NCBI GenBank assembly: GCA_001949185.1 | Contig: BDGG01000014.1 | Span: 124,001 to 188,000, forward strand | Direction: 5' to 3' | Source: Ramazzottius varieornatus | Taxonomy: Eukaryota > Animalia > Tardigrada | DNA length: 64,000 bases | In this document: in pieces, positions 1 to 27,670 of the stretch | Layout: each line of letters begins with the position of its first letter | Numbering within the stretch: position 1 is the first letter of the stretch | Translations under genes and position numbers: made by a program | Notes under the pieces: model-generated | Seen by the model: the letters and a program-made list of their open reading frames with translations, nothing else | What the model was told of the DNA's origin: nothing | Database searches by the model: none

Positions 1-1081
1 CTACGGTCGATACTGTGAATGTGACAACTTCTCTTGCGACCGCTTCAACGGCCTGGTCTGTGGTGGGCCGGACCACGGCACATGCGAGTGCGGGACTTGT
101 GTCTGCAAGCCGGGCTGGACTGGAGCCGCTTGTGAATGCTCGACGTCCATTGAGACGTGTCAAAGCAAAGACGGAGTAAGTCTTGTGGCAAATGTATCTG
201 AATGGAAATTGACATTATTAGGGAATATTTATTTTCTGATGGGGCTTTTTTTCAGAACATTTGTAACGGTCACGGAAAGTGTGTCTGCGGCGCATGTGTT
301 TGCGACGTCAACGAGGACGGTAACCCCGAGTACTACGGACCAACCTGTGAAAGCTGCCCGACATGCCCGGACGAATGTTACAAGTTGAAGAACTGTGCGC
401 AGTGTCATGGCTTCGGGACTGGGGCACTGGCCGACGACGACGATGCAACCTTCTGTGCCAGAAACTGTAGTGCCACCTACAATACGACCCAGTTTACCCA
501 TGCCGACGAACTCGTTGGTACGTTCTCCGGCTAATCTTTTTTAAACCGAAATATCGAGAATAATGAAACAATCGTGCTTTGTTTTTTTAGTGGATATGCC
601 GGGAGAAAAGATCTGTCAGTTCCGTGATGAAAGCGACTTTTGTACATTTTTCTTCTCCTACTACGAGATTCCTGGCACTATCAATGGACGCATGGTGGAA
701 ATCCAGAAAACCAAAGGTCAGCTCTTCTTGGATCTATACTCTCAACTGCAATTCATGGGTTGATTAGGTGTGACTGTGTAGTTTGTCCGGAAACCGTGGG
801 TGCCTGGGCGGTTATCCTCGGTATCATCGGCGCAGTGTTGGCTGTCGGTATGGCGCTTTTGCTGATATGGAAGATCTTGACCATCATTCATGATCGGCGA
901 CAGCTGGCCAAGTTTGACGCTGAAGTGGAGAACGCCAAGTGGGATACGGTAAGGGAATGAATTTTGCTCTTTGTCGACTTGAACCTGTCGAAGAAGTTCG
1001 TGTGGCCTTTTACAGAGTGGAAACCCCATTTTCCGACCGGCCACCAACACCTACCGCAATCCAGTATATGTTAACCGATAG
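1..1081 (+). CDS. Integrin beta subunit, 3' portion (I-EGF repeats, beta-tail, TM, cytoplasmic tail); exons ~1-175, 256-517, 591-716, 782-948, 1016-1081
   Basis: Cys-rich repeats ([33 protein letters not shown]), TM segment [22 protein letters not shown], juxtamembrane IHDRR..AKF..E..NAKWDT, tail [21 protein letters not shown]; GT-AG junctions join in frame. Confidence 0.96.
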
Positions 1082-1664
1082 GAAGTGTGCGGGAAATTGT
1101 TTCTTGACTGCCTTACAAGCCAAAAGGACCACGGAAAAAAGTCTTCTAGAAAGAAGACAAGGGTTTCGACAAAAGATTGGCAGCTGTTTTACAAGCAGCG
1201 TTTGTTGCGTGTCTTTCACCACTTTGTGCCCCAATTAACTGACTGATATGTCCGACTAGAAAAATACTACTTTTTACCACTGTTTGTGCATCTAGAACTT
1301 TTCGTCTAAACTTTTATCTGTTTTATCGGCGTTTTCATCTTTAACTTTTCTCTCACTTTTTTTCCCGAGTTGTTGGTTTTATGCATTAATCTTTCAGTCA
1401 TTCTGACGTTGGTCACTAACTTTTGCGTTCTTTTATCTGCCTCTGTTTTTTTCTCTCCTGCCTGTATGGGGTTTTTTGGTGTTTCTAATTATGATTCATG
1501 TGCGTTTGAAGCCTTCGAGCTTCTCTCCGTTTGATCCTTCTGATTCATTTTGTACTAATCCCATATTTGGCTAGCGGTAAACACGTGTTTTACGTGTCTA
1601 CGGAGTTGTCAGTTCCTCTAACCTTCGCGTACGTCCGTACCGCTTGTACGTATGCAGAAATTAA

Positions 1665-2185
1665 CACCTTGAGCACGGGGCGGGAAACTCACTTTCCCGG
1701 CGCACACTCATTTGTGCGTAGCGAGTTTCCAGTTTACCTTTTGCTCCACGTTTTTTTCCGTTTGCCCGGACAATCAACTCTTCTTGAAACTAAAACTAGC
1801 GGCTACTGCACGCTGGCTCTGCAAACCTGTGTGGAATTTTTTCCTTTCGCAACGGGATTTCGGCGTAGCCAGCAAATTACTTTCCAGCCAGGCTCTCAGT
1901 TAGTCCAGAGTTACCGAAATGTTGCGCGAGCCCAAACATTTTGGTATCTTGCGACAGTTTCAGATTCGTGGAAAGATCTGCTCAGTGGTCATTAAAAAAA
2001 CATTGAAGCCTGGTCGTTTTGAGTTGGCAGGTGGCGCACTCTACATCATATTCCAAAATTTTGGCCAATCGATGAGGTGGTGATCGGTCCAATTTGGCAC
2101 CGCCTCCAAGTTTTAACCAGTTGAAACAAGGCGAAAGTGACCGCATCGTATTCTGAAAGTACGAAATCGCGCAGTGCTTAAGGTG
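1665..2185. mobile_element. Non-autonomous piggyBac-like element (MITE)
   Basis: TIRs CACCTT(G/A)AGCAC at both ends, flanked by TTAA at 1661-1664 and 2186-2189. Confidence 0.7.
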
Positions 2186-2561
2186 TTAAGTTATGTACGT
2201 TGAGTTATGTACACCGTGATCGACAGAACGTACCTTAGCTGGTTGCCGAACAGCCTCGACGGCCTCCCAATCGGACGTACCCATGCTTGTACAGCAGCCA
2301 GTGCTTCCTGTTCTTCGTGCTGTGATACCCGGCTTCCCTAATAGCCAGCAGAGGCGTCCCATGCTTTTCCGGCGGGACTAAACTTTAGCCATGACCTGAT
2401 AACCCTTGGTGGAAATTCATGTAGGCAAAGCTTGCAGTCAAGCTGGGCGGCAGCCTCGTAGAAACAAGTCGCACTCAGTATGCACTGTGCCGACGGACTG
2501 TGTGCATTTGAGGCAGTTTGAGGGTCTTGGACAGTCTGCAGTGCGGAACCACGTTCGAACC

Positions 2562-4124
2562 ATGGCGGAAGGCCGAAAGGCCGCAGAACGCATCATCATA
2601 ATTCTACTGCCTCTTCTGTCGCTTGTTTTCTGCAGCTGGCTTTGCATCGACATTGGTGACTATTTTGTCAACGGCGAAGCCGCCACTGGACCAAACCTAC
2701 TGAGCGTTAAGAATCGAGCCGCCAAGTTCGCAACCTTCCTGGCCTATTTTCGTTCGCAATTTTCGGCCTTCCATGCCACAGCTACTTTCACCGCCTTTCT
2801 GTTCCGAAGATGTCGGATGCGAAAGACCATGTTGCAAATGCGAAGAACGGAAAAGTTCTTCTCTCTTGCGCAATGGGACCCGCCAGTAGCGGCCGGACGC
2901 TGCTTCCAGAAATATGTCTGGTTTCTCTTGGCCATTTTAACGATCGTAACATTCGCTCGCCATACCTATTTAATGTACACTATCCTTGTATCTCGGCAAG
3001 ACTTCTCGGAAGACAGCATCATCCCATATTTCGTATGGAGGCTGAGCAAAGGCCATCTCTCCCTTATCCTGCAGTCCCTCGTGCTTCTCGAAGATGTCTC
3101 CATGCTGATGATCTATCGCCTCGTCCTTTCCCACAGCAGTGTCGCTATTGAAATACTCGAGACAATCAGCCAGAAAATACAAACTACAGCCATCGTCTGC
3201 AAAAAATCCAGCTTGATCAGTAGTACCTTCTCCAAGACGGTTTTACCACAGCTGATTGACCTGGAAAACGCGGCAGTGGGAATAATTCGAGCTTTGGACT
3301 GGGCTTTCCGTTCTGTCATCGGCTGTACTGTGGTGGGGAACGCTCTCAGTCTCTCGTCGGTCATTTCCCAGTGTTTTCTGTCCGAGTCATTCAAGACACT
3401 GGAGGACTACTGTTTGTTCATCTCGGCCATTACTCAGTTGGTCCTGGCAATAAGCCTGGTGTTAGTTGGGTTCGCAGCGGTCCACAGCCAGGTACTGTAC
3501 TGCTTACCACATTATCGCGCACCCAACCACGTGAACAGTAAACGAGGCCCGGGTCAGAGACATAAAGGCTGTGAACTGATACCCTGGGCACTGGGCAACG
3601 ATATCTCACCCCGTGGTCCAGTGCGCGATAAACTGGGGGGACGACAGTCCTGTATCTTCAAATCTTTTCAAACCGTTTTTCGATAAGGCTTTTCGCTCTC
3701 AGAGGTTACGGGATATGGATCTGTGCAACGAGCTGGTAAAGTCTCGGCAGCTGGCTCGTACTCAAGCACCTGGGAAGATTACAGCTTCTGAGGAAGGTCA
3801 AGTGTTATTGGTGCTGACTTCTGTCTTCGCCAAACGACCTCGATCAGTCACTGTTGCAGGCGTGGTTGGTATCACCTACTCTCTAGGGTTTAAAGTAAGT
3901 TTTGCAAGACTACGAGCACGCATTCTGAACGTAAGGTACGAGTGTGATTGATGGACCATTATGGCCACTGTTTACAGATATTCATGGGCTTCCTCGGGTT
4001 GATCTGTTTTATGATCGAGCAACAAGAGCACCATCAACTGAGAACCCACTACATTCAAGAACAGGCTGCTCGCCAAGAGTACGCTCAGGCGATGGCTTGC
4101 CTATCCGTTGTCCAAGCACTCTAA
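2562..4124 (+). CDS. Gustatory receptor-like 7TM chemoreceptor; exons ~2562-3491, 3688-3894, 3978-4124
   Basis: Long hydrophobic first exon, two short phase-0 3' exons, C-terminal VTVAGVVGITYSLGFK|IFMGFLGLICFMIEQ resembling the GR TM7 signature. Confidence 0.75.
3495..3648. mobile_element. Short degenerate MITE of the pogo-like family seen at 16310-16915, inside GR intron 1
   Basis: Ends ctgtactgct..ttatcgcgcacccaaccacgtgaacagtaaa and gtggtccagtgcgcgataaactg..cag match the TIRs of 16310-16915. Confidence 0.65.
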
Positions 4125-20636: not shown

Positions 20637-23397
20637 TCAGTACGGAGATGGGGTAGGGGTGGGCGCGGGACAATTCAGGACAGGAACGGATGGATCCACA
20701 TCGGTGTCCACAGTTGCGGAGGCCGGTAGGAAATTGAAGATGGGACCGACAAACTCACTGTAGTCGGCGAAAGGGCGGATGCGGTATCCGCTGTTGTAGG
20801 AGTGGTACACCTGATACTCCTTGAGGGCGATGAAGTTGAAGAGGGACTCCAAAGCCGAGTAAGCCTCGTCGTTCAGAGCATCGCCCAGGAAGAATTGAGC
20901 AGCCTCCATTTGTGCATCGACATTGAACTGGAATAACGAGCACGTGGGGCAATAAAAAAACAGTGGAGAATCTCGCAACGAGACTTACGGCATGGTAGGC
21001 CAGAGTGAACCATGACTGGCCAAGAGCTCGAGATGTTCGGTAGTTGCGGAATGACACGCGATCGATGGTTCGAATGGCCAAGGCATTGTTGTTCTGAGTT
21101 ATACCAACTGTAAACGAATCAATCAAGGTACGTGCATGCTTGATGAGATATGGCAGCGACGAATTTTTTGGCATTTGGTCAATGACCTACCAATAATCCG
21201 ATCGAATTCCCTAAGCACAAACACTGGTAAAACAAGGACTAGAAAATTGTGAGACGTGGGCTCTTACAGCCAAATGACTCTTTGTCATTTACTCACGCGG
21301 CGCTGGAGGCAGCTGCCTGATCCTTGGCTGCACTGTTCCACAGATCGTCAACGCCGACTACCCCAGATACCGCTTTGTATTCAAAATGCCACAGGAGGAA
21401 CCTACAAGTGGATAAAGTGAGGTTAGATTAGGCTGGAACTGGAATGTCGTGGTCGATATCCCCTGTTTTTATCTATACTGAGCAAGTTGTTAGTGAAGAC
21501 CCACGTGTATTCAGACTGCTTGACAAAGATTTTGGCGCCCTCTGTTTCGTTCACCCCAGCAGAGGCCGCAGCAGCTCGTGTTAGGTTCCTCCACGTTGCG
21601 TAAGCGAGAGCCAATTGGTCAACGCTAATGCCCGTGTAGCGGTCCACCGTTTTATTCACTGTGGCCGAGTATGGTGCGGGAGTCAGCGGAGTGGATCCCT
21701 CCGCCGCTTGAGGACGAGGGAACATTTCAGCCGAGACCTTCAAAGCTTTGCCTTCGATCAAGTCCAGCTTCATATTGAAGTCGTGACCGGCTTGCGTGCG
21801 GTCCGAAAACATGCGAGCGGTGGGCAAAGTCGAAGCTTTAGCCGTACCAGCTGGTGTGACTGGGCCAAAGGTTCGGTTGGCGTCGGTCGCTTGCACTAGA
21901 ATGTTGATCTTGGCGGAACTGTTTTTGGGGATGGGATACCTCAGCTCGGAGGGTGTCAAGTCGGCGTACGAAATATCCAGGCAGTCATCGTCTTCGAGAC
22001 CTTCGTATCGTTGATAGATTCGCTTTAGGTATAAGTCTGCCTGGATGGCCGCATGCCAGTTGATGTATCGGAAGACGGTTTTTAAGGCCGAGTGCACTTC
22101 GTCACTCAGCGGGCCCATGACGTAATCAGCCGCAGCAGTTTGTTGGATGGTTCGATGCTGCAACAAGTAGTATTATTTCAATGAGAGCAAGCATAGCTTC
22201 AGTGGCCATTGTGATGTGGCTGAAATCGGAGCAAAGAACACGGCTTGTCAGTTCTGGTACCAGATAAATATGGATAACATCTCCGATCTTGAATCCGGAA
22301 GAACGGTACTGCAGGTACGATTTATAGGTAACATCACTTTCCACTCGGGCATAGCCAACTGGGTCGAATCCAAGCAGATGATCTGCGCGCATAATAACAG
22401 GTTAGAAGTCTGTTTTTTTTCTACTTCAACCTTAGTACCTAAGGTAATAATCTAGAAAACTGTCCGAGTTTTTTTGGGGGCGGTGACTGTAATTTATGCA
22501 CTTAGTCTAGAAGGCTGTTCTTAATCAATTTGATCGATATTTATCAAAGGCGGTGTCGATAGATTTTTAGGCGGTGAAGGCGGTGACGATAGCCATTTCT
22601 TTTACTAGAATTGCAAATTTGAACTGGTGAAAATGGAACCAACAGAAATTTACCCAGTCTCTCCGAAATGGATCTGCCGTAAGCAGTGGAGAGCGCTTGA
22701 GCAGCGCTGCTCTCCCAGTACGACTCCTTACTCAGAGCTGACCCACCACGCAAGGGCCCAGCCTACGGGAAAATGATAGCAGTAAATTCAGAAACACTGA
22801 TAACAGGAGGCCTTATCAAAAGTTGCTTTACTTACACTCTCGCTACCGACGACGGGGTACGGCAAGCCGGCCTTCTTTGCGTCATTAGGATACCAGAGCG
22901 TTTGACTAAAAAATCACAGCACCATCTGGCGCTATACTGTATGCTAGGAATGTCTCGTTGAAGTCCTCATAAGGTGCATCGCTTCAGTACAGTGCTTACA
23001 TGTAATTGACGATGGAGCCAAACAGGTCAGGCCCTTGCGAGACATCGACGAACGCCGCCTGCGCTGCCATCTGGAAGATTTTGGCGGTCTGGTTTCGGAC
23101 GATATCCAGCTGACGGATGGAGATGCCGGAGACAAAGTCGAAAGGAATGCCACTGGTCGCCGTAAAAGAGTCGGATGTGGGGACGGTAGAACCGTTTACC
23201 GGAGCGGGCTTCGTTGGCAAACAGCTTGGTGGTGCCGCTGTGGTATAGTATGAGTCCGAATAAGCCGAAGAGCCGTAGTCTGCAGCTTGGGTACCTCCCA
23301 TCATCGGCATAGCGCTGGATGACGAAACACTTCCGGTCGTCATCTGGCCGTAAACTGCGGCCACCAAGATCGACAGCCAAGGTGATATTCTTAACAT
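20637..23397 (-). CDS. Secreted protein with two tandem globin-like domains; exons ~23397-23000, 22943-22836, 22762-22654, 22382-22261, 22157-21479, 21401-21297, 21210-20989, 20927-20637
   Basis: Signal peptide MLRISPWLSILVAAVYG, Ser/Thr-rich linker, internal duplication (GISIRQL/GISVDQL; PLSDEVHSALKTVFRYI/ALNDEAYSALESLFNFI); three 1-nt corrections needed. Gene is well supported; globin call is moderate. Confidence 0.6.
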
Positions 23398-26364: not shown

Positions 26365-27670
26365 ATGGATGAATTCACCCTTGCTGATGTCGACCGGATC
26401 CCTGGGAAGGACCGTCTGGGCGAGAAGCTCTTCCGTACGAAGAGCAATATGGGTTCTGCGATCGATGACTGAAGTTAGGAGTATTTGGGGGTGAGTTCGT
26501 CGAGCGTGTGAAGAGTTCACCGAAGATTTTACGTATTGAGGATTTCGGTGTCGGTTACGGTTTCACGACGAAACAGTTGCTGAAAGCCGGAGCGATCACC
26601 ACTGCTAACGATCTATCGGAAGATCATCTGAAAGTCCTCTGGGATACCACATCGGAGGAAGAAAGATCTCCATTGCACCTCGTGCCAGAGAACGTTGTAA
26701 ATTTGGAATTTCCAGACGGAAGCTTTGACGGAATAATGGCTTGCCGGTGGTTCAACTTCTTGACGGTTGACGAAGTCCTTAAAGTTTTGAAAAAGTTTCA
26801 CAAGTGGCTCGTACCGGGCGGCAGAATCTGTGTTACGATGGAGTTCCTGTGCTCAGCTTGGTACGTAAACGAGTACCCAAAGTACCTTAAGAGAAAGAGA
26901 AACAGAGAGGAGTGGCCCGGTGTGTTTCAAACAGAAAGTGGCCCGCAGTTTGAGGCTAACATCACTCTGCCTGCTAAATCTATTCACTATGACGAATACA
27001 TGGGTATCACCATATAGGAATGCGTCCAAAGCATTTTTGCTTGCAATTGGTTTTTTATAACATCAAGTTCTTTGGAATATTGAACCGCACCATAGGTTCA
27101 ATTTGCCGCACTTTGCCGCGAAACCAGAACAAACGGTCGAAAAATACACGCTAATGAATCAGAAACCACAGGGGTGTAAGGGGCAATCTTGGCGTTGACT
27201 CCAGCCGGAGACGCGAATCAGCAACCACGTACGATGCATGTTGTCCGGCTAAAGCTAGTGTTTGATTAACTGATCGAACACAGCTGCGCACATCGCGTTT
27301 GACCGTTACGCGTGCCGATTCATGCACCACACAGTCTTCACGCTCTTTTAGGGTGCCACTTGTAACTTTCTGACTTGTGGTAAGAACTCGATTCTGATTT
27401 CAGATTCGCGCTCCTCGGGGTCTGTTTGATGTAGCGGTTCTCGTTACAGTGAGACTTTAGGGTCCAGAAACTTTAGAACGTTCTCCTGAACAATTTCGTC
27501 AGACACACTTTGGGCGCATTCTCATATGGAGATACCCATATGTTGCGAAGGGAGCTGGAACGAGCTGGATTTGTCATTGAGAAGATCCGATACGAAGGAC
27601 GGTCTTCCTACCTGAAGGAGAACCAGGTGGATGGAAGAGAAAGGAGTTGGATCTATTGCTCAAAAACTCC
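26365..27670 (+). pseudogene. Class I SAM-dependent methyltransferase copy 1, intronless, disrupted by frameshifts and a 540-bp insertion
   Basis: LRIEDFGVGYGFTT (motif I), NDLSEDHL, FPDGSFDGIMACRWFNFL, WLVPGGRI, EWPG, LRRELERAGF. Confidence 0.8.
27000..27539. mobile_element. TIR element inserted in the methyltransferase CDS
   Basis: ~32-bp TIR ATGGGTATC.CCATAT..GAATGCG.CCAAAG; removing it rejoins YDEY|MLRRELE in frame. Confidence 0.8.

What the first reader, a model, noticed from the sequence alone, without database searches (positions are those of the whole stretch)
20637..23397. Secreted two-domain globin-like protein that lacks the proximal haem histidine
Seen: signal peptide, Ser/Thr-rich linker, then two repeats that align by eye (GISIRQLDIV/GISVDQLALA; LWY/LWH; RVESDVTYKSYLQYRSSG/RTIDRVSFRNYRTSRALG; MG-PLSDEVHSALKTVFRYI/LGDALNDEAYSALESLFNFI). 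Repeat 2 reads like a globin: A helix DRYTGISVDQLALAYATW, E helix PYLIKHARTLIDSF (distal His), GH/H helix LGDALNDEAYSAL. A phase-2 intron appears to split the Arg codon of LLR|FLLW (needs one restored G), and both repeats have a phase-0 intron in the putative G helix. Established: globins conserve introns at B12.2 and G7.0, and secreted di-domain haemoglobins occur in Daphnia and Ascaris. However, the F-helix region has Ser/Asn and no His in either repeat, and no CD1 Phe is evident. Inference: an extracellular globin-fold protein repurposed for non-haem or atypical (Tyr/distal His) ligand binding, possibly an undescribed family.
Basis: partly seen in the sequence, partly recalled or inferred. 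Interest (0 to 1): 0.85.

Follow-up and report, generated by a model that had tools for sequence, protein, structure and literature searches.

The report
Secreted two-domain His-less globin-derived protein
A tardigrade gene encodes a secreted protein made of two copies of a domain that most likely descends from a globin but has lost both haem-holding histidines, so an oxygen-carrier fold seems to have been recycled for another job outside the cell.

Summary
The gene is real and lies on the minus strand at 23397..20637. Its "E helix with distal His" (PYLIKHARTLIDSF) cannot be spliced in frame. The only frame-consistent GT-AG model has 9 exons, including a 20-nt micro-exon, encodes 628 aa, and puts that segment inside intron 7.

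The signal peptide, the Ser/Thr-rich linker and the two homologous repeats are confirmed. No standard search recognises the protein: Pfam, PDB sequences, 1.8 billion representative proteins and the ESM Atlas all gave nothing. Relatives are only exon-sized fragments and one 246-aa single-domain protein (P0007).

Block-wise profile comparison with this genome's own globins links two parts and no others:
- the start of each repeat to the globin A helix (P 0.006);
- the last exon of each repeat to globin G7-H (P 0.0002, 0 of 400 shuffles).

In both repeats a phase-2 and a phase-0 intron sit in exactly the B12.2 and G7.0 registers of the tardigrade globins. The central, haem-pocket part shows no similarity. 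The F8 column is Tyr in both repeats and His in P0007.

The AlphaFold models were of low confidence, so the fold is unverified. Verdict: a probable, strongly remodelled, His-less globin derivative (about 0.6). Its function is unknown.

The parts
23000..23397 (-). Exon 1: ATG, signal peptide, Ser/Thr-rich linker and N-part of repeat 1. Ends in phase 2 (AT|gtaagc).
23347..23397 (-). Signal-peptide-like N-terminus (MLRISPWLSILVAAVYG).
   Evidence: Read from the sequence. P0007 and the paralogues also start with hydrophobic leaders. No signal-peptide predictor was available.
23167..23346 (-). Ser/Thr/Pro/Tyr-rich low-complexity linker.
21999..23166 (-). Repeat 1, spanning exons 1-5 from FTATSGIPFD to ...YQRYEG.
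22906..22999 (-). Intron 1, phase 2. The split codon is followed by QTLWYP, with an aromatic at +5 and Pro at +6. This is the same register as B12.2 in this genome's globins.
22836..22905 (-). Exon 2 (70 nt).
22654..22762 (-). Exon 3 (109 nt). Ends in phase 1.
22261..22382 (-). Exon 4 (122 nt). Ends ...IYL| in phase 0, with an aromatic at -2.
22158..22260 (-). Intron 4, phase 0. G7.0-equivalent of repeat 1.
21505..22157 (-). Exon 5 (653 nt): last part of repeat 1 (G-H-like), the inter-repeat linker and the N-part of repeat 2 (A-helix-like).
21672..21998 (-). Inter-repeat linker. Its start (C-x-D...P-x-E...GPVxP) is conserved in relatives.
20760..21671 (-). Repeat 2, spanning exons 5-9 from YSATVNKTVD to ...RPFADY.
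21402..21504 (-). Intron 5, phase 2 (AC|gtgggt...tag|G). B12.2-equivalent of repeat 2. No base needs restoring.
21297..21401 (-). Exon 6 (105 nt). Ends in phase 2 (GC|gtgagt).
21191..21210 (-). Exon 7, a 20-nt micro-exon (cttag|GGAATTCGATCGGATTATTG|gtaggt). It is needed to keep the reading frame.
   Evidence: The paralogue has an equivalent 38-nt micro-exon.
21108..21190 (-). Intron 7 (83 nt).
   Evidence: The same acceptor position occurs in L002 and L020.
20989..21107 (-). Exon 8 (119 nt). Ends ...AYHA| in phase 0.
20928..20988 (-). Intron 8, phase 0. G7.0-equivalent of repeat 2. Residue i after this intron aligns with residue i after G7.0 of the tardigrade globins.
20637..20927 (-). Exon 9: G-H-like module of repeat 2 (FFLGDALNDEAYSALESLFNFI), a Pro/Thr-rich tail and the stop codon.

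Best explanation
Window 23397..20637 (minus strand) holds an intact 9-exon gene for a 628-aa secreted, probably glycosylated protein.

Domain order: signal peptide, Ser/Thr-rich linker, then two tandem copies of a domain of about 180 residues joined by a linker of about 100 residues, and a short Pro/Thr tail.

The domain most likely descends from a globin. Its first module keeps the A-helix motif (G-[IM]-S-x-x-Q-L...W). Its last exon keeps the G7-to-H pattern (F-[FV]-[LM]-G...D-E-x-x-S-A-L...F-x-F). The two ancestral globin introns (B12.2 in phase 2, G7.0 in phase 0) sit in the same registers in both copies. This shows that a whole multi-exon globin-type unit was duplicated in tandem.

The middle part, which in a globin builds the haem pocket (C-F helices), has diverged beyond recognition and carries two extra introns. 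There is no distal His or Gln, and the column of the proximal His holds Tyr in both copies.

Inferred, not shown: the protein no longer carries O2 through a His-ligated haem. It acts outside the cell as a binding or structural protein that uses the remodelled pocket for another ligand, or at most holds ferric haem through Tyr.

The family is small and fast-evolving in this genome. There is one further intact two-domain gene, two copies with stop codons, and many relic fragments. It is otherwise seen only in tardigrade-like sequence fragments.
For: Gene model:
- All introns are GT-AG and 61-271 nt long. The CDS is 1887 nt with no internal stop.
- The paralogue has the same architecture.

Repeats.

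Restricted family:
- Only 9 hits among 1.84e9 representative proteins.
- Only 4 hits in the 5.8e9 set.
- Paralogues and relics within the genome.

Globin link:
- Of 20 family-block by globin-block comparisons, only the two collinear end pairs stand out: 14.3 and 17.6, against at most 9.7 for the rest.
- With the official tool, the last-exon block against globin exon 3 gives P 0.003 with 5 globins. This improves to P 0.0002, probability 47%, when two more globin exons found independently are added.
- Aligned columns are 7-37 to 7-37, counted from the intron on both sides.
- 0 of 400 column shuffles reach this score (z 8.3), and the reversed control scores 8.0.
- The register is stable under jackknife, and for repeat-1-type and repeat-2-type members taken separately.
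- The A-helix block gives P 0.0057, with 0 of 200 shuffles reaching it (z 5.5).

Introns:
- The tardigrade globins L033, L034 and L036 have B12.2 with an aromatic at +5 and Pro at +6. L033 and L036 have G7.0 with an aromatic at -3 (L033) or -2 (L036).
- The family has (I)QTLWYP and an aromatic at -2 (I-Y-L|, Y-F-T|).

Central region of P0007, laid ungapped from the phase-2 anchor:
- The intron-anchored offset is the best of 51 offsets for both globins tested.
- Its HHH (63-65) falls on the globin F8 His.
- The window repeats have Tyr in that column (alignment).

Precedent: F8 Tyr occurs in Daphnia HbL domains, and arthropod androglobins lack both His (PMC7457136).

Weak structural hint: 3 of the 20 weak Foldseek hits of model 2 are globins.
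Against: - Pfam's Globin model finds none of the exons, nor P0007. In a six-frame scan of the whole genome it finds 7 globin places, none in this family.
- Genome-wide HMMER searches with the family block and with the globin block give no cross hits at E <= 10.
- A first whole-domain hhalign gave probability 0.1%, though on poorly built alignments.
- The central blocks show no similarity (P >= 0.1).
- hhalign probabilities stay below 50% and rest on short, shallow profiles drawn from one genome's globins.
- Both AlphaFold models of P0007 are of low confidence (pLDDT 53-54) and disagree on residues 165-189. Structure searches give no significant match.
- The function is pure inference.
Confidence: 0.6

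Rival explanations
1. This is a tardigrade-restricted orphan secreted protein family with no evolutionary link to globins. The resemblance would be chance: two amphipathic helices plus coincident intron phases.
For: - No Pfam, PDB-sequence, HMMER or Atlas link to anything.
- The central 80-100 residues show no similarity to globins.
- The predicted models are unreliable and give no significant structural match.
- The globin idea was suggested by eye before it was tested, so some post-hoc choice is involved.
Against: - Two separate blocks score above all shuffles and above the reversed control, in the collinear cells only.
- The signal grows as globins are added.
- The alignment register equals the intron register on both sides.
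- Both intron phases, the aromatic-Pro at +5/+6 and the aromatic at -2 all match.
Confidence: 0.25
2. The domains still bind haem, ligated by the Tyr at the F8 column as in haemoglobin M and the Daphnia F8-Tyr HbL domains. The protein would then serve as an extracellular ferric-haem binder or carrier rather than an O2 carrier.
For: - Tyr occupies the column of P0007's HHH and the globin F8 in repeat 1, repeat 2 and most paralogue copies.
- F8 Tyr is known in Daphnia HbL domains (PMC7457136).
- The single-domain relative P0007 keeps His at that column.
Against: - The alignment of the central region is weak.
- No CD1 Phe or E7 His/Gln equivalent is seen.
- The L002 repeat 2 has Ala at that column.
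- There is no experimental or structural support.
Confidence: 0.12
3. The locus is a decaying, non-functional gene, like its stop-bearing paralogues. The micro-exon model would then merely rescue a frameshifted pseudogene on paper.
For: - Two paralogues on the same contig carry in-frame stops, and many relic fragments exist.
- The exon 6/7 junction of the simple model is out of frame.
- There is no RNA evidence.
Against: - The 9-exon model is fully open with canonical splice sites.
- The micro-exon architecture is shared with the intact C31 paralogue.
- With the micro-exon, the segment from the second Trp to the phase-1 intron is 24 aa in repeat 2, repeat 1 and P0007 alike.
Confidence: 0.05

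Closest known systems
Metazoan globins with the ancestral B12.2/G7.0 gene structure (for example this genome's own globins at C12:563k, C2:6.99M, C17:95k)
   Same: - A-helix motif and G-H motif are similar at profile level.
- Phase-2 intron with an aromatic-Pro at +5/+6.
- Phase-0 intron in the same register.
- An extra 'central' intron in the region where globin central introns vary (PMC7457136).
   Different: - Not recognised by Pfam Globin.
- The domain is about 180 aa rather than about 150.
- The central part is unalignable.
- No E7 His/Gln, no F8 His and no evident CD1 Phe.
- Secreted, with mucin-like linkers.
Secreted di-domain haemoglobins of Daphnia and Ascaris. Their secretion and domain count are from my own knowledge; the Daphnia monodomain HbL variants with F8 Tyr or Val are from PMC7457136.
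   Same: - Signal peptide and two tandem globin-type domains.
- Replacement of the proximal His by Tyr has precedent in the Daphnia HbL domains.
   Different: Those proteins are readily recognisable globins, most of them with intact haem pockets. Here the whole pocket region has been remodelled, and both copies lack the His ligands.
Degenerate globin domain of arthropod androglobin (PMC7457136)
   Same: An animal globin-derived domain that has lost both the E7 and the F8 His.
   Different: Androglobin is intracellular, chimeric (calpain-like) and circularly permuted. This protein is secreted, collinear and duplicated in tandem.
Non-haem globin-fold families: the RsbR N-domain, phycobiliproteins and photoglobin (PMC8717448 abstract)
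   Same: A globin-type scaffold used without a His-ligated haem.
   Different: Those families are prokaryotic or algal and are not secreted animal proteins. No sequence link was tested or found here.
P0007, a 246-aa single-domain relative from a JGI metagenome contig of 975 bp
   Same: Signal peptide plus one copy of the same domain, collinear with repeat 2 without gaps from the LW motif to FFLG.
   Different: It has one domain and no intron in the contig. It carries HHH at the F8-equivalent column where the window repeats have Tyr. Its organism is unknown.

Membership tests
Globin (Pfam PF00042 / globin superfamily) | Match to the curated Globin sequence model | tested here: not met
   - No Globin hit for any exon or for P0007 at E <= 1.
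- A six-frame scan of the whole genome with PF00042 finds 7 globin places, none in this gene or its paralogues.
Globin (Pfam PF00042 / globin superfamily) | Detectable homology to bona fide globins by profile-profile comparison | tested here: inconclusive
   - The whole-domain comparison failed (probability 0.1%).
- Block-wise, the A-helix block gives P 0.0057 and the G7-H block gives P 0.0002 (probability 47%).
- Both exceed all 200-400 column shuffles and the reversed controls. Only the collinear pairs stand out.
- The central blocks are negative.
Globin (Pfam PF00042 / globin superfamily) | Ancestral intron positions B12.2 (phase 2) and G7.0 (phase 0) | tested here: met
   - Both repeats have a phase-2 intron and a phase-0 intron.
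- In repeat 1 the split codon of the phase-2 intron is followed by an aromatic at +5 and Pro at +6, as in the tardigrade globins. Repeat 2 has His-Phe there: the aromatic is kept and the Pro is lost.
- The numbering after the phase-0 intron aligns 7-37 to 7-37 with globin exon 3.
- The globin splice sites were checked in the DNA.
Globin (Pfam PF00042 / globin superfamily) | Proximal His at F8 | tested here: not met
   - The column aligned with P0007 H63-65 and with globin F8 (L034 H63/H64, L033 H64) holds Tyr in repeat 1 (TYKSYLQ) and in repeat 2 (SFRNYRT).
- No His is invariant in the family.
Globin (Pfam PF00042 / globin superfamily) | Distal E7 His/Gln and CD1 Phe | tested here: not met
- The family column nearest to E7 holds Y/F-G-R or is deleted.
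- At about +6 after the C2-like Pro the family has Ala, Gly, Leu or Ile, not Phe.
Globin (Pfam PF00042 / globin superfamily) | 3-on-3 alpha-helical sandwich fold | tested here: inconclusive
   - The two AlphaFold2 models of P0007 have pLDDT 53.9 and 53.2 and pTM 0.33-0.34.
- Model 2 lists three globins among 20 weak hits, at E 5-9 and TM < 0.3.
- The window protein itself was not folded, because the joined step was left out.
Secreted di-domain haemoglobin (Daphnia/Ascaris type) | Signal peptide plus two tandem globin domains that bind haem | tested here: inconclusive
   The signal-peptide-like leader and two tandem homologous domains are present. The haem-binding residues are absent, and haem binding cannot be tested with these tools.

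The most novel reading that the evidence does not exclude
Tardigrades would carry a family of secreted, tandem two-domain proteins that are true globin-fold descendants. In them the haem pocket (the exon-2 equivalent) was rebuilt to bind something other than His-ligated haem. This would be the first non-haem globin-derived family in animals. Single-domain relatives such as P0007, which still have His at F8, would mark the intermediate step.
Probability: 0.35. Interest if true: 0.75.

Novelty: new variant of a known kind. Interest (0 to 1): 0.6.

Why it matters
Globins are a textbook case of a fold and a gene structure conserved across kingdoms. According to the abstract of PMC8717448, non-haem uses of the fold are known from bacteria, cyanobacteria and red algae.

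A secreted animal family that keeps the outer globin modules and both ancestral introns, but has replaced the haem pocket, would show how an oxygen-binding scaffold is re-used. It would give globin evolution a dated, intron-anchored example of exon-2 remodelling.

It would also add an uncharacterised extracellular protein family to tardigrade biology. Another follow-up in this scan reported a different haem-less globin relic in the same genome, which hints at a wider trend.

In practical terms, the work corrects the gene model: a 20-nt micro-exon is needed, and the supposed distal His is intronic.

Tried and rejected
**Searches that found nothing**
1. Pfam on every exon and on P0007, P0003 and P0001.
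2. PDB sequence searches with exon 5, with profile A2 and with profile A6 gave no globin and no meaningful hit.
3. ESM Atlas look-alikes of P0007 reached a best score of only 0.78, which is uninformative.
4. Metagenome scans with A3 and with P0007.
5. The search for homologous proteins with P0007 found only itself. With the ORF over intron 7 and exon 8 it found no candidates, so that test of coding versus intron failed.

There were therefore no reads and no read laying.

**Structure attempts**

8. I tried to place the short middle exons on P0007 with MAFFT to deepen the AlphaFold alignment. Every set of fragments collapsed onto the others. Both AlphaFold jobs therefore had alignment cover only at the two ends.
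9. A beta hairpin at P0007 166-189 appeared in model 1 but as a helix in model 2, so I dropped it.

**Ideas dropped**

10. My early guesses (ferritin-like, haloperoxidase-like, lysozyme-like, lipid-binding helical families) have no support from any search.
11. My interim conclusion 'not a globin' rested. I withdrew it after the block-wise tests.

**Other**

13. Literature searches found no description of this family.
Full report
**Where and what**

The genome has 55.8 Mb in 200 contigs, and the window is C14:124001-188000. An earlier follow-up note of this scan names the organism as Ramazzottius varieornatus. The finding lies on the minus strand. Six-frame reading and ORF listing show:
- an ATG at 23397;
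- a hydrophobic leader, MLRISPWLSILVAAVYG;
- a Ser/Thr/Pro/Tyr-rich stretch;
- a series of short coding pieces ending at the stop at 20637-20639.

**Gene model**

The e5/e6 junction needs no restored base: AC|gtgggt...tag|G splits a Thr codon in phase 2.

The only donor is GC|gtgagt (phase 2), the acceptor tag|GTC is phase 0, and no phase-2 acceptor exists in that frame. The resulting 8-exon model is 1946 nt, which is not a multiple of three.

One model is consistent. It uses a 20-nt micro-exon (21210..21191, cttag|GGAATTC...TTATTG|gtaggt) and the acceptor acag|TT at 21107. This gives 9 exons, eight GT-AG introns of 61-271 nt, and 1887 nt coding for 628 codons with no internal stop.

Three observations support the micro-exon model:
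- The intact paralogue on C31 has an equivalent 38-nt micro-exon followed by a phase-1 acceptor at the same place.
- A relic on C2 has ttgtag|TT GGT at the same place.
- With the micro-exon, the segment from the second Trp to the phase-1 intron is 24 residues in repeat 2, as in repeat 1 and in P0007.

The joined spliced protein was never searched or folded. In one search a script concatenated the exons only to count length, stops and composition, and nothing of it was printed or sent.

**Repeats and family**

The last-exon parts of the two repeats match directly (BLASTP E 2e-6). The N-parts are linked through paralogues and P0007, which hit both; a direct BLASTP of the two N-parts found nothing. 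Three intron positions are shared by the two repeats: phase 2, phase 1 and phase 0. So a multi-exon unit was duplicated in tandem.

In this genome the family comprises:
- one more intact two-domain gene, at C31:~600-3200;
- two copies on C14 (419-422k and 968-971k) with in-frame stops;
- a partial copy at the start of contig C11 (C11:1-1400);
- relic fragments on C1, C2, C5, C6 and C14.

Outside the genome:
- HMMER against 1.84 billion representative proteins found 9 proteins. Eight are family relatives: seven exon-sized fragments plus P0007. The ninth is a low-complexity artefact.
- P0007 is a 246-aa protein from a 975-bp JGI contig, with a signal peptide and a single, uninterrupted domain.
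- A profile search of 5.8 billion proteins added only three more fragments.

**Standard recognition fails**

| Test | Result |
|---|---|
| Pfam, every exon and P0007 | no family |
| PDB sequences, by sequence and by profile | nothing meaningful |
| ESM Atlas, P0007 | best score 0.78 |
| Pfam Globin model, whole genome in six frames | 7 globin places, none in this family |
| First whole-domain hhalign against those globins | probability 0.1% |
| AlphaFold2 on P0007, two runs | pLDDT 53.9 and 53.2 |
| Foldseek and VIA searches with the models | nothing significant |

The AlphaFold alignments covered only the two ends of the domain. The two models disagree on residues 165-189. The second model does list three globins among its 20 weak Foldseek hits (E 5-9). 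At this point I took the globin idea for unsupported.

**Block-wise test**

The helix lengths in model 2 and those weak hits made me test the idea properly. I used only this genome's own globins, taken by reference, and cut both families at their introns. The blocks were:
- family: N-part, post-phase-2 block, two central blocks, last exon;
- globins: exon 1, start of exon 2, E-F region, exon 3.

Results:
- Of the 20 hhalign block pairs, only the two collinear end pairs stand out. N-part against exon 1 scores 14.3 and last exon against exon 3 scores 17.6. All the others score 9.7 or less.
- With the official tool, the last-exon block against five globin exon 3 sequences gives P 0.003, aligning columns 7-37 with 7-37 counted from the intron on both sides.
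- A genome-wide search with the globin exon-3 profile found two more globin exons. After adding them the result improves to P 0.0002, probability 47%, in the same register.
- None of 400 column shuffles reaches this score (mean 7.8, max 12.7, z 8.3). The reversed control scores 8.0.
- The register holds when any single globin is left out, and for repeat-1-type and repeat-2-type members taken separately.
- The A-helix block gives P 0.0057 over 24 columns. None of 200 shuffles reaches it (z 5.5) and the reversed control scores 8.3.

**Introns**

Three tardigrade globins have a phase-2 intron whose split codon is followed by an aromatic at +5 and Pro at +6. Family repeat 1 reads (I)QTLWYP, and P0007 reads LNLWFP at the aligned place.

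The globins' G7.0 intron is phase 0 with an aromatic two or three residues before it: F-A| in L036 and Y-I-D| in L033. The family reads I-Y-L|, Y-F-T| and L-Y-Y|.

B12.2 and G7.0 are the two ancestral, highly conserved globin introns, and extra 'central' introns vary in position (PMC7457136). The family's extra introns lie in that central region.

**Central region**

The central blocks show no profile similarity (P >= 0.1). I laid P0007's uninterrupted central 83 residues ungapped from the phase-2 anchor:
- Offset 0 is the best of 51 offsets against L034 (9 identities in 66, shuffle p 0.015).
- Offset +1 is the best against L033.
- P0007's HHH (63-65) then falls on the globins' F8 His.
- In the family alignment the window's repeats have Tyr in that column, in TYKSYLQ and SFRNYRT.

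F8 Tyr occurs in some Daphnia HbL domains, and hexapod androglobins lack both His (PMC7457136).

**Against**

- HMMER-level searches do not connect the two families in either direction.
- The profiles are short and shallow.
- The globin set comes from one genome.
- The idea was formed by eye before it was tested.
- The fold is unverified.

I therefore put globin descent at about 0.6-0.7. Function is inferred only. There are no His ligands, seven N-glycosylation sequons, only three Cys, mucin-like linkers and a fast-decaying gene family. This suggests an extracellular binding or structural protein rather than an O2 carrier. Tyr-ligated ferric haem remains a minority option.

**Earlier notes of this scan**

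Three first-reader notes flag the paralogues with the same globin idea: s1-808269 at C14:~419.5k, s1-795745 at C14:~969k, and s1-808265. They are the same kind of reading and not independent evidence. A follow-up on another gene (s1-794861) reports a haem-less globin relic in this genome. I did not check it.

**Verdict**

The gene is a probable new, strongly remodelled, His-less, secreted two-domain variant of the globin superfamily. One reader error matters: the supposed E helix with a distal His is an intron.

Noticed in passing
L003/L009/L013 (G000:C14:418.7-423.5k) and L005/L008/L014/L015 (G000:C14:967.5-972k): Two paralogues on the same contig carry an in-frame TAG at the same codon of the exon-1-like part (IVKTQ*AKVLQAAANAS and LVQTQ*AKVLQAAANAS), and further stops elsewhere. 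Either the stop predates their duplication or it was spread by gene conversion.
   Followed up: partly
G000:C2:3065.3-3067.4k, C6:2181.7k, C14:816.9k, C2:2359.4k, C5:3126.6-3127.2k, C1:6817k: Relic fragments of mainly the last two exons of the family are scattered through the genome, several with stop codons. The C6 copy joins an N-part-like piece to a last-exon-like piece.
   Followed up: partly
G000:C2:1756969-1757731 (L039): A further globin gene. Its exon 1 and exon 3 were found with the exon profiles. It was not listed by the Pfam Globin scan at E <= 0.01.
   Followed up: partly
G000:C12:502379-502744 (L032): A globin whose B-to-H region lies in one uninterrupted 162-aa open frame. Unlike the other tardigrade globins examined, it has no G7.0 intron.
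   Followed up: no
window 26508-27017 (+): An open frame with a class I SAM-dependent methyltransferase domain (Methyltransf_11, E 3.5e-14), about 3 kb upstream of the gene. This appears to be an unrelated neighbour.
   Followed up: no
P0006 (1950 aa, ENA contig of 1.1 Mb): A long, highly repetitive Ser/Pro/Cys-rich predicted protein matched exon 5's linker in 11 stretches. This is a low-complexity artefact, not a relative.
   Followed up: yes
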